Positions 28,331-31,300 of a stretch of 64,000 nt of DNA are shown piece after piece (within the stretch, counting starts at the first letter, position 1; each line of letters begins with the position of its first letter). The stretch is from NCBI RefSeq assembly GCF_016432865.1, contig NC_067402.1, forward strand, positions 217,682,001-217,746,000, written 5' to 3'. Under the pieces are notes generated by a model. It worked only from the letters and a program-made list of their open reading frames with translations, was not told where the DNA came from and made no database searches. The position numbers were made by a program, and so were the translations under genes. The stretch comes from Antechinus flavipes. Lineage: Eukaryota.

Positions 28331-31300
28331 AAACTAGGGGATTGCACTAGCTGCTTTCCCAAAGCTCCCCCCTGTGGCTTCAGTCTGTGCCTCCATCCTC
28401 CCCCGAGGCCAGCGGGTAGGCCAGCCGCCTCTCCGAAGCTTCTTCATGGTCTCCGCTTTTAAATCACTACTAGTTCTTAACCTTCGGTCCATGAACTTTT
28501 CTTTCAGTATTTTGATAATTGACTTTCTATATAATTGATTCCTTTGTAATCCTAGGTATTTATTTTGTGCTTTTAAAAAACAGTAGATTCATAGGTTTCA
28601 TCAGACTGTCAAAGTTGTTTGTGATACAAGAAAGATAAGAAACACCCTCCCCTTCTCTCCCCTCCCCCCCACTTAAACCCATCCAAGGATTTTTTTTCTT
28701 CCTTCCTCCTGTCACATCTTCCCTCCAGGCTTCTCTCTCCGTCTCCACCCATCCTCCTTGCATTGTAGCCCTCTACAGAGTATTCTGACCACTTAGCTTC
28801 CTAACTGAGCTCCTTTCTGTCACCTCTTTTTTTTTTTTTTCATTTAATAAGCATTTATTTTCTTCCCCTTTTCCCATTGGAAAAGCGGGGGAAAGGATAA
28901 AACCCTTATAACAAAATATAGATACTATTTGTTACAAGTATTTTTTCTTTGGGGAGAGGTAGGGTAAGATTAGGAGAGCGTGGAGGAAGAAAAAAGAGAT
29001 GGTTGATATTTTTTAATTTTAATATAATGGTACAAAAAACATGCAGTTAAACAAAAATACCTACAGTGGCCTCCTCAAAAAGCAATATATCCCATTCTTC
29101 ATCTGGAGTCCACCACCTCTCTTTGAGGACATGGATGGCATGGAATCTACCCCCTGGAATGCTGGCTGGTTGCTGTTGCATTACTCAGTTTTTAAATCAA
29201 AATAGATTTGTCTTTGCAATATTGTCATATAAAAAGCTCTCTGTGAGAGCTTTCACCTTCCCTTTGTTTTCTTCTCTGTTAGTGTGCTCTTTCAGACTGC
29301 CAATAATTCTCTTATAGTGTAGTTTTCTTAGACTATTCCTATACCCTAACATTTCATCCACCCTCAATTTATACCTTAGAAACTTGACTCCTCACAATAA
29401 AACTTGTGACCTTCACTCCTATTAACCAAAAATGTTTCCTCTTCTCTCCTATCTTGTCTTCCCACTCATTTCCATTGCATTCTACCTCTCCTAAACTGTC
29501 CCTACCATTTCATATTTCCTCTCTATTATCAATACACCCCCCCAGCCTCCTGTACCTGATATTTCACCAAAATGAAACAAATATTGACTAAACTTTGACA
29601 CTCCCATATTATGACCTGTGTACCCCTTGCTGCCTATTTCCACTTTTGCCAGAAAATTAGGACTGACTAATGGTGGATATGAAGTTAGAGCAATGTTCAT
29701 TCTCAAATTAAGTTTATAACTCTTTGTCTAAAACTCTAAAAACTGTGATCCCATATAAATACATTTGATGTACCCTGTAGTTGTGCTATTATCCCCATTG
29801 ACACATAGTGAAAAGACTTGTTCCTATCCATCTCATGCTATCTTCCCAGATTAGTCAGAAGTACAGTGCTTAACCCTCAAATGAATACAATCTTTTTGTC
29901 ATAACTCACATTCAACTACTACCATTTAGTTTCAATTGCTTCAGCCACCAACCTTGTGAAGGTTCCCTGGGCTAGGTGAAGGATAAGGGACAGGTGAGCA
30001 GACAGGTGATATGGGAATCATCCTGTCTTCTCTATTAGCCATGATTAGTGGAATAGGGAAGGGAGTTGGTTGATACTTTGTCATGAAGTAGGTTGGTCAC
30101 TTCTTCTACCTGCAGGCCAGAAATGAGCCAGATGTTTATGAGACCAGCGACCTCCCAGAGGACGACCAAGCAGAATTTGATTCGGTAAGACCATATATTG
30201 CCCCACAAGTCCCTTGATACTTGACCTCTCTCATCCCCTTTGCTAATAAGCCACAACAAAAAGCTGGTGTTCCGGTGTATTTTGAGTTGTTGGTCATACA
30301 AAGCACTTAGACTTAACATTTAATTTGGAGCATGAAGGAGAAATACCAAAGACAGTTAATTCTGACCTACAAAACTCTGTTCTTGAGTTCATCTGGTACA
30401 ATCTGAGCGAAATAACTGAGGTTAGGAAAAACTCAGACTCCTGGGACCTGGTTATTGTTTAAAAACAAACATGAAACCTGAGATGCTATAAACTTTCCGA
30501 GGTTGAGTCATGTCTTCTTCAGACAGTATTTCACTCAATATTCTCTTTCCTGGGAACTGGTGACTTACCTAGTGCACAGCTTCATAGGTTGAAGAAAGGG
30601 TTGTGGTTTTGGAGCTTTTTACAGAGATTGAGGAAAGGTCATGACAAAGAAAGATTACAGAGGAATCGATTCACTTAGCAAAGAAAAAGTGCTTTAAGAG
30701 AATTTTAAATGCAGGAAGATGTTCAGAGAAGAGAGATGGTATGAGGAAAACTATGGGTGTAGTCCCGGACAACAGAACATTTAGCACATCATGTATTCAG
30801 GTCTCCCTTATATAGAGAGCTTTGTGTAGTAGAAAAGAAGAAATACAGTCCTTTTCAAGGAACACAACCTCAACTTCCAAGCTAATAGAATAAGATACGC
30901 CCAAAGACTATATAAGACCTAACAAAGTATTGTTACATGTTAACATATTAAAAGTTACAAACTAGGGTGAGGGTACCAAAAGCTATCTGATTAGTATATC
31001 TTGCCAGGGCAAGACAACTGTCCATGACAAACAATGGTGCCCTGAGAGGCCTATGGCACAGCCAGCAGTGTCCTGGCCTCTTATGCAGCTTGTTCAACCT
31101 TTGAAGATGGGTAGAATTGACCCTTCTCTATCCCTGAAAAAGAAACAGCAGGTTATTTCCCCCTTTTGGTTTGGAGATAAAGAATATGCTTAATTGTATT
31201 TATTATATGTTTCTGGTATTCCCACTATGTCCTGGGCTAGGGTGAACAAAAGACAGTATGGCTTACCATCCTCAGGAGGCAGGCTTCACATATATATGTA

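What the first reader, a model, noticed from the sequence alone, without database searches (positions are those of the whole stretch)
31041..31262. Duplicated DCTN2 microexon cassette leaving a candidate new in-frame 15-nt microexon (GEQKT)
Seen: about 165 bp upstream of the FAQ microexon (33304-33474) recurs 2.26 kb earlier (31041-31205), and the similarity resumes at the exon. FAQ copy: cctggacactag|TTTGCACAA|gtaagacc. Upstream copy: cctgggctag|GGTGAACAA-aagaca|gtatgg. The paralogous exon appears to have lost its GT, but another donor lies 6 nt later and defines 31241-31255 = GGT GAA CAA AAG ACA (G-E-Q-K-T). This is phase 0 and in frame between exon 2 and FAQ/EL. Known: DCTN2 has a variable microexon array in the p50 N-terminal extension. 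Inference: the array grew by local duplication, and this is either a fossil or an unannotated third microexon. It lacks the UGC and the strong pyrimidine tract of the FAQ copy, so decay is at least as likely.
Basis: partly seen in the sequence, partly recalled or inferred. Interest (0 to 1): 0.72.

Follow-up and report, generated by a model that had tools for sequence, protein, structure and literature searches.

The report
Copied intron flank, no new microexon
In the DCTN2 gene of the yellow-footed antechinus, about 175 bases of intron just upstream of a well-known 9-base microexon were copied 2.3 kb further upstream in an early marsupial. The copy does not include the exon, and the proposed new 15-base exon is a weak arrangement found only in dasyurids, with no evidence of use.

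Summary
The repeat is real. Window 31043-31211 recurs at 33306-33480 at 80-82% identity (E about 1e-38), and it is the only such pair in the window. It is a local duplication, not two transposon insertions. The downstream copy is in place and old: its 3' part aligns with the conserved flank of the FAQ microexon in cow and gerbil, and its last bases also in Komodo dragon. Cow and gerbil have a single copy. Tasmanian devil, monito del monte and koala all have both copies, so the duplication predates the australidelphian radiation.

The claim that similarity resumes at the exon fails. It is not significant in antechinus and disappears in koala and Dromiciops. In those two species the "exon" is 21-22 nt long, has an in-frame TGA and ends in GC, not GT. 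The 15-nt frame and GT donor are therefore dasyurid novelties. The donor is weak, and 13 other in-frame AG..GT stretches in the same intron score as well or better.

None of 261 database proteins that span this junction, including 14 marsupial forms, carries GEQKT. FAQ and EL are vertebrate-wide exons (PMC3583065), so this event did not grow the array.

The finding is ordinary and of low interest.

The parts
31043..31215 (+). Copy 1, the derived copy of the duplicated intron flank
   Evidence: 80-82% identical to 33306-33485. Present at the same place in Sarcophilus, Dromiciops and koala. No counterpart in Bos or Meriones.
33306..33485 (+). Copy 2, the source: distal upstream flank of the FAQ microexon
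   Evidence: From about 33392-33423 onward it aligns with the Bos FAQ flank, from 33448 with Meriones, from 33459 with Varanus. It is therefore in place and older than the duplication.
31241..31255 (+). Candidate 15-nt 'GEQKT' microexon; judged not to be an exon
   Evidence: Donor ACA|GTATGG scores 2.9 bits against 7.2-9.0 for the four real donors nearby. 13 other in-frame candidates in the intron are as good or better. The GT and the frame are dasyurid-only; koala and Dromiciops have GC, 21-22 nt and an in-frame TGA.
33554..33562 (+). FAQ microexon (DCTN2 exon 3 in human numbering)
   Evidence: TTTGCACAA between AG and GTAAGA. Intact in all 8 species examined. Described in PMC3583065.
36193..36198 (+). 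EL microexon (DCTN2 exon 4)
   Evidence: GAGCTG between AG and GTAAGA. Intact in all 8 species. Described in PMC3583065 and PMC7821500.
30116..30184 (+). DCTN2 exon 2, ending in phase 0 (…AEFDS)
   Evidence: Read directly.
38393..38489 (+). Next constitutive DCTN2 exon (EELTSTS…TKGL)
   Evidence: 100% identical to Antechinus flavipes XP_051817530.1.
31265..31740 (.). Conserved intronic block just downstream of copy 1. It is not part of the duplication but marks the neighbourhood of the insertion.
   Evidence: About 0.83-0.97 identity to Dromiciops and koala (most 60-nt windows 0.90 or higher), against an intron mean of 0.74. The core 31346-31432 also aligns with Bos and Meriones.

Best explanation
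In a marsupial ancestor, before dasyurids, Dromiciops and koala diverged, a piece of about 175-180 nt of DCTN2 intron 2 was copied and inserted about 2.3 kb upstream. The insertion lies in the same intron and the same orientation. The source was the distal part of the conserved flank, roughly 75 to 250 nt upstream of the FAQ microexon.

The copied tract stopped about 70 nt short of the exon, so no exon was duplicated. The copy has since drifted at close to the intron's ordinary rate.

The 15-nt AG…GT stretch 30 nt downstream of the copy is unrelated intron sequence. In the dasyurid lineage, a 6-7-nt deletion and a C-to-T change happened to leave it stop-free, a multiple of three and followed by GT. 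It is most likely never spliced in.

Shown: the repeat, its direction (source versus copy), its age bracket, the lack of exon homology, and the lineage-specific origin of the frame and donor. Inferred: the mechanism of copying (a short templated insertion or repair patch rather than a tandem duplication) and the non-use in RNA.
For: - Repeat statistics.
- Sharp edges, with nothing else collinear between the copies. This argues against a 2.26-kb tandem duplication.
- Copy 2 is orthologous to the FAQ flank of Bos, Meriones and Varanus.
- Both copies are present and syntenic in Sarcophilus (intron 93% identical), Dromiciops (76%) and koala (79%).
- Only the FAQ-flank copy is found in the Bos and Meriones loci, even when all eight marsupial units are used as queries.
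- Tree: all marsupial units lie far closer to each other than to Bos (branch 0.80). The copy-1 sequences group together (support 69) on very short internodes.
- Exon-level similarity is not significant and is absent in the less derived copies.
- Candidate exon across species: the AG is kept in all four; the donor is GT in Antechinus and Sarcophilus but GC in Dromiciops and koala; the length is 22 and 21 nt there, with an in-frame TGA.
- The donor is weak and the intron holds many equally good chance candidates.
- Among 261 proteins that span this junction, the inserts seen were none, EL, FAQEL and a few gene-model oddities, never GEQKT. This includes 14 marsupial forms, among them Sarcophilus X1 and Antechinus flavipes.
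Against:
- The donor score uses an approximate position-weight matrix written from memory, not MaxEntScan.
- The Antechinus annotation is thin. It lists only the 403-aa form, although FAQ and EL are intact in the genome, so the absence of an annotated GEQKT form there says little.
- Three of the 18 members of the marsupial protein cluster were not shown.
- No didelphid DNA could be fetched, so the older age bound is open.
- No repeat library (Dfam/RepeatMasker) was available. The case against a transposon rests on orthology and copy number in the sequence held.
- The 3' 80 nt of copy 1 is 89-92% identical between orders when gaps are ignored, which could hint at constraint. Against the whole intron, however, it lies only at the 73rd-81st percentile.
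Confidence: 0.8

Rival explanations
1. The whole cassette (flank plus FAQ exon) was duplicated. The upstream exon then decayed through several deletions, so 31241-31255 is a fossil paralogue of FAQ.
For: The weak match is collinear and covers the acceptor, the exon and the first intron bases (CCTGG..CTAG / TG.ACAA / AAGAC). It scores at p about 0.03-0.05 against shuffles in the two dasyurids.
Against: - Against real window 55-mers the match is unremarkable (466/3000).
- It needs two deletions of about 18 and 28 nt within a 74-nt stretch that is nearly invariant across amniotes, whereas the 175-nt unit itself carries only 1-3-nt indels.
- The match depends on a dasyurid-specific 6-7-nt deletion and disappears in Dromiciops and koala.
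Confidence: 0.1
2. The 15-nt stretch is a young, dasyurid-specific microexon that inserts GEQKT into the N-terminal arm of p50/dynamitin in some tissue.
For: In Antechinus and Sarcophilus it is AG-flanked, 15 nt long, stop-free, in phase 0 and followed by GT. It sits in an intron that already supports two regulated microexons, next to a conserved block.
Against: - The donor is weak: A at position -1 and T at +4, 2.9 bits against 7.2-9.0 for real donors nearby.
- There is no UGC motif and no strong pyrimidine tract before the acceptor, and no UGCAUG nearby.
- 13 equally good chance candidates lie in the same intron.
- There is no annotated product in Sarcophilus or Antechinus.
- It is not conserved beyond dasyurids.
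Confidence: 0.04
3. The two units are independent insertions of one interspersed repeat family.
For: The edges are sharp, the length is short, and identity is about 80%. That is the same range as a 600-bp repeat family found elsewhere in the window. No repeat library could be consulted.
Against: - The 3' 60-90 nt of copy 2 is orthologous to the FAQ flank of cow and gerbil, and its last 25 nt to that of Komodo dragon.
- There are only two copies in the 64-kb window, and none elsewhere in seven other DCTN2 loci of about 9-64 kb.
- Copy 1 is as close to copy 2 as marsupial orthologues are to each other. A transposon would have needed a consensus matching a flank more than 160 My old.
- No tRNA-like part and no Rfam match were found.
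Confidence: 0.03

Closest known systems
DCTN2 alternative microexons 3 (FAQ, 9 nt) and 4 (EL, 6 nt)
   Same: Same gene, same intron interval between …AEFD(A/S) and EELTS…, phase 0 and a multiple of three. Both real exons are present and intact in this window (33554-33562, 36193-36198) and in all eight species examined. They are described in PMC3583065, and their neural and developmental regulation in mouse in PMC7821500.
   Different: FAQ and EL are invariant from lamprey to mammals. They have GTAAGA donors, long conserved flanks and, for FAQ, two UGCAUG motifs just downstream. The candidate has none of these and exists in its 15-nt form only in dasyurids.
Alternative exons born by tandem exon duplication (own knowledge of the literature on duplicated or mutually exclusive exons; not checked here)
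   Different: In that class the exon bodies and splice sites are what is duplicated, and length and phase are usually shared. Here only intron flank is shared, the lengths differ (15 against 9 nt) and exon similarity is not significant.
Short templated insertions or 'repair patches' copied from nearby sequence at a DNA break
   Same: A discrete piece of 70-200 nt with sharp ends, copied from a few kb away, with nothing else duplicated.
   Different: The mechanism is inferred only. No empty site or junction microhomology could be defined, because eutherian sequence does not align at the upstream edge.
Intronic pseudoexons (chance AG…GT pairs that are not spliced)
   Same: Weak signals, no conservation, and many equivalents in the same intron: 196 in-frame stop-free candidates of 3-30 nt, 13 of them as good or better.
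   Different: None that was tested. This is the class I file the 15-nt stretch under.

Membership tests
Duplicated exon cassette (paralogue of the FAQ microexon) | Sequence similarity that covers the exon body and both splice sites, beyond chance | tested here: not met
   113/3000 shuffles and 466/3000 random window 55-mers reach the observed score. No match at all in Dromiciops or koala.
Duplicated exon cassette (paralogue of the FAQ microexon) | Flanking intron duplicated together with the exon | tested here: met
   175 nt of upstream flank shared at 80-82% identity. The shared tract ends about 70 nt before the exon.
Duplicated exon cassette (paralogue of the FAQ microexon) | Same length and phase as the parent exon | tested here: not met
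   15 nt against 9 nt in dasyurids; 21-22 nt in koala and Dromiciops.
Conserved (neural-type) microexon | 3-27 nt, frame-preserving, stop-free | tested here: inconclusive
   Met in Antechinus and Sarcophilus. Not met in Dromiciops (22 nt, TGA) or koala (21 nt, TGA).
Conserved (neural-type) microexon | Exon and splice sites conserved across lineages | tested here: not met
   The donor is GT only in dasyurids and GC in koala and Dromiciops. The surrounding window lies at the 63rd-65th percentile of intron conservation.
Conserved (neural-type) microexon | Strong donor, and a UGC/pyrimidine-rich element just upstream of the acceptor | tested here: not met
   Donor 2.9 bits against 7.2-9.0 for neighbouring real donors (approximate matrix). 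There is no TGC in the 25 nt before 31241, whereas FAQ has TTGCCTGG at -15.
Conserved (neural-type) microexon | Inclusion seen in RNA | not testable with these tools
The runs on offer were contigs only, and the RNA runs came from a relative about 5% diverged.
Interspersed repeat (two independent insertions) | Further dispersed copies, and no orthology of a copy to pre-existing sequence in outgroups | tested here: not met
   No third copy in the window or in the other DCTN2 loci. Copy 2 aligns with the eutherian and lizard FAQ flank. A repeat library was not available.

The most novel reading that the evidence does not exclude
In the dasyurid lineage a 6-7-nt deletion and a C-to-T change turned a stretch of intron next to the copied FAQ flank into a usable lineage-specific 15-nt microexon. 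This would add GEQKT to the N-terminal arm of dynamitin in some tissue. It would be a microexon caught at birth in an intron already equipped for microexon splicing.
Probability: 0.04. Interest if true: 0.5.

Novelty: new member of a known kind. Interest (0 to 1): 0.12.

Why it matters
It matters little. It documents one more small, old intronic duplication, here of part of a conserved microexon flank, and removes a false candidate exon from consideration.

Two points are mildly useful. First, the FAQ and EL microexons are intact in Antechinus flavipes although the public annotation lists only the 403-aa form without them. Second, resemblance to an exon in a single species can be created by later lineage-specific changes, so outgroup copies should be checked before an exon duplication is called.

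If the 15-nt stretch were after all spliced in dasyurids, it would be a dated example of microexon birth.

Tried and rejected
No junction, depth or pile-up evidence was obtained.
- Local alignments in my sandbox still used the whole window file as subject. I masked those places from then on.
- **Joined spliced model.** Only single exons by reference and database proteins were used.
- **Word search with the 75-aa open stretch across the candidate exon** (31194-31418) found nothing. This is uninformative, because intronic ORFs of these genomes seem not to be in the collection.
- **DNA not delivered or not on record.** Gracilinanus, Macrotis and Trichosurus DNA was not delivered. The wombat 403-aa form is not on record. 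The didelphid state and the location of the Gracilinanus VRQRI insert are therefore unknown.
- **ARAGORN and Rfam** on the intron gave nothing relevant.
- **LTR-pair idea** (two direct repeats 2.26 kb apart) was rejected: there is no purine tract, primer-binding site or target duplication by eye, and copy 2 is orthologous to the eutherian flank.
- **Simple 2.26-kb tandem duplication** was rejected: nothing else is collinear.
- **Constraint on copy 1** was considered because of 89-92% identity in its 3' 80 nt. It was not upheld against the intron-wide distribution.

Full report
**Where we are.** The window is DCTN2 (dynamitin/p50) with MBD6 and DDIT3 downstream. A 15,265-nt locus fetched through the Antechinus flavipes protein XP_051817530.1 is identical to window 27458-42722 at every base. 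The genome is therefore the yellow-footed antechinus assembly GCA_016432865.2, and the DCTN2 coding range is window 27958-42222.
- Exon 2 ends at 30184 in phase 0 (…AEFDS).
- FAQ is 33554-33562.
- EL is 36193-36198.
- The next exon starts at 38393.

Hammesfahr and Kollmar (PMC3583065) describe FAQ and EL as independently included exons 3 and 4. They are invariant in sequence and present from lamprey to human. MicroExonator (PMC7821500) shows their developmental regulation in mouse. The "known" part of the finding is therefore sound.

**The observation.** The repeat is real. Positions 31043-31211 match 33306-33480 over 175 columns at 80% identity (E 8e-39). No other copy lies in the 64 kb. A MAFFT alignment gives 82% overall, 74% in the 5' half and 88% in the 3' half. 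The edges are sharp. Upstream of the unit there is no similarity (310/2000 shuffles do as well), and a sensitive comparison of the two intron halves finds nothing else collinear. This is therefore not a 2.26-kb tandem duplication of which the rest survives.

**Transposon or local copy?** No repeat library was available, so I used orthology. I reached full-length DCTN2 proteins through a search with the exon at 38393-38488 and two word searches. I then fetched the gene loci of Bos mutus, Meriones, Varanus and chicken.
- The antechinus intron aligns with these loci only at conserved islands. One island is the FAQ flank: it starts at 33423 against Bos (33392 with a more permissive search), 33448 against Meriones, 33459 against Varanus and 33516 against chicken.
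- The 3' 60-90 nt of copy 2 is therefore old sequence in its original place. The unit straddles the boundary between unconstrained intron and the amniote-conserved flank. That pattern fits a copied piece of local DNA and does not fit an inserted element.
- Bos and Meriones have only this one copy, even when all eight marsupial units are used as queries.

**Age.** A region-restricted search from a ratite protein brought up the marsupial cluster. Its members are listed. Loci could be fetched for Sarcophilus, Dromiciops and koala but not for Gracilinanus, Macrotis, Trichosurus or wombat.
- Intron 2 is collinear throughout with the antechinus intron: 93%, 76% and 79% identity. All three species carry both copies at the same places.
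- In a tree of the eight units rooted with the Bos flank, the marsupial units are close to each other and far from Bos (branch 0.80). The copy-1 sequences group together with modest support (69), and the internodes between copy 1 and copy 2 are very short.
- The duplication thus happened on the marsupial stem, not long before dasyurids, Dromiciops and diprotodonts diverged. Whether opossums have it is untested.

- In antechinus the match beyond the unit (CCTGG..CTAG, TG.ACAA, AAGAC) is marginal against shuffles (74/2000 and 113/3000). It is unremarkable against real 55-mers from the window (466/3000).
- It would need two deletions of about 18 and 28 nt inside a 74-nt stretch that is almost invariant across amniotes. 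The unit itself carries only 1-3-nt indels.
- Decisively, the four-marsupial alignment shows that dasyurids have lost 6-7 nt exactly here. Dromiciops reads TTAG|GGATGATGTCTGAACACAGACA|GCATGG and koala reads GTAG|GGTGATGCCTGAACAAAGACA|GCATGG.
- In those less altered copies the only similarity to the FAQ side beyond the unit is the continuation TTTATTAAC of the unit itself. Nothing is found at the exon (635/2000 and 282/2000 shuffles).

**Is the 15-nt stretch an exon anyway?**
- The AG is kept in all four marsupials, but the donor is GT only in Antechinus and Sarcophilus and GC in the other two. The segment is 22 and 21 nt long there, with an in-frame TGA.
- In antechinus the donor ACA|GTATGG scores 2.9 bits on an approximate matrix, against 7.2-9.0 for the donors of exon 2, FAQ, EL and the next exon.
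- Intron 2 contains 196 in-frame, stop-free AG…GT stretches of 3-30 nt, and 13 of them are as good or better on both crude measures.
- There is no UGC motif before the acceptor and no UGCAUG nearby. FAQ has both, with TGCATG at 33588 and 33611.
- The surrounding window is only at the 63rd-65th percentile of intron conservation.
- Among 261 database proteins that span this junction, the inserts are none, EL, FAQEL and a few oddities. None is GEQKT, and the 14 marsupial forms include Sarcophilus X1 (FAQEL) and the single Antechinus product.

**What could not be done.** The decisive RNA test was not possible. The runs on offer were contigs only, with RNA from a relative about 5% diverged. Some local sandbox alignments used the unmasked window file, and I masked it from then on. 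No contig taken for human was fetched or compared.

**Does copy 1 do anything?** Its 3' 80 nt is 89-92% identical between marsupial orders when gaps are ignored, the same as copy 2. However, the intron as a whole is well conserved (Dromiciops-koala median 0.83). With gaps counted, the block lies only at the 73rd-81st percentile, against the 90th-96th for copy 2. Dasyurids have also deleted 12 nt at its end. I therefore treat copy 1 as a neutral relic and give a small chance to a regulatory role.

**Verdict.** This is a real, old, marsupial-specific copy of about 175 nt of the FAQ microexon's upstream flank. It was most likely a short templated insertion. It did not duplicate the exon and did not build the FAQ/EL array. 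The GEQKT microexon is a chance pseudoexon whose frame and GT arose only in dasyurids. It is ordinary.

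Noticed in passing
window 31265-31740 (core 31346-31432): A roughly 480-nt intronic block is about 0.83-0.97 identical (most 60-nt windows 0.90 or higher) between antechinus, Dromiciops and koala, against an intron mean of 0.74. Its core, GCTGGCT.A.AATG..TGGCTTGGC.TACTCACTT, also aligns with cow and gerbil at 76-77%. 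The reverse complement of TACTCACTT reads AAGTGAGTA, which looks like a splice donor. There is no Rfam match and the function is unknown.
   Followed up: partly
proteins P0259 (Gracilinanus agilis isoform X3), P0203 (rat), P0233 (dingo), P0234 (Lemmus), P0217 (Microtus): Some database DCTN2 forms carry other short inserts at the same junction: VRQRI, VRLSG, VRLC, VR and PLFPQ. Those starting with VR would fit read-through of a GTAAGA donor to a later donor. In antechinus, exon 2 is followed by GTA AGA CCA, but no VRQ-type stretch is found anywhere in intron 2 of the four marsupials held. Gracilinanus DNA was not delivered, so the source of VRQRI is unknown.
   Followed up: partly
window 33554-33562 and 36193-36198: The FAQ and EL microexons are intact, with canonical splice sites, in Antechinus flavipes. 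The public annotation of this assembly nevertheless lists only one 403-aa DCTN2 product without them. Sarcophilus, Dromiciops and wombat have annotated FAQEL forms.
   Followed up: yes
window 30185-30194 and 33563-33572: The introns after exon 2 and after FAQ begin with the same ten bases, GTAAGACCAT. The intron after EL begins GTAAGAAGCC.
   Followed up: no
window 33588 and 33611: Two UGCAUG (RBFOX-type) motifs lie 26 and 49 nt downstream of the FAQ exon. Another lies at 36083, upstream of EL.
   Followed up: no
window 7855-8966, 20047-27030, 63252-63425: A repeat family of about 600 nt with many copies in both orientations at 70-85% identity. It includes large inverted arrangements (21466-22716 and 23360-25913 match their own reverse complements), just upstream of the DCTN2 start at 27958. 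It is presumably a marsupial interspersed repeat but was not identified.
   Followed up: no
window 30395-30485 and 36935-37230: Two further intron-2 islands are conserved at about 0.83-0.93 between antechinus, Dromiciops and koala, in addition to the FAQ and EL flanks.
   Followed up: no
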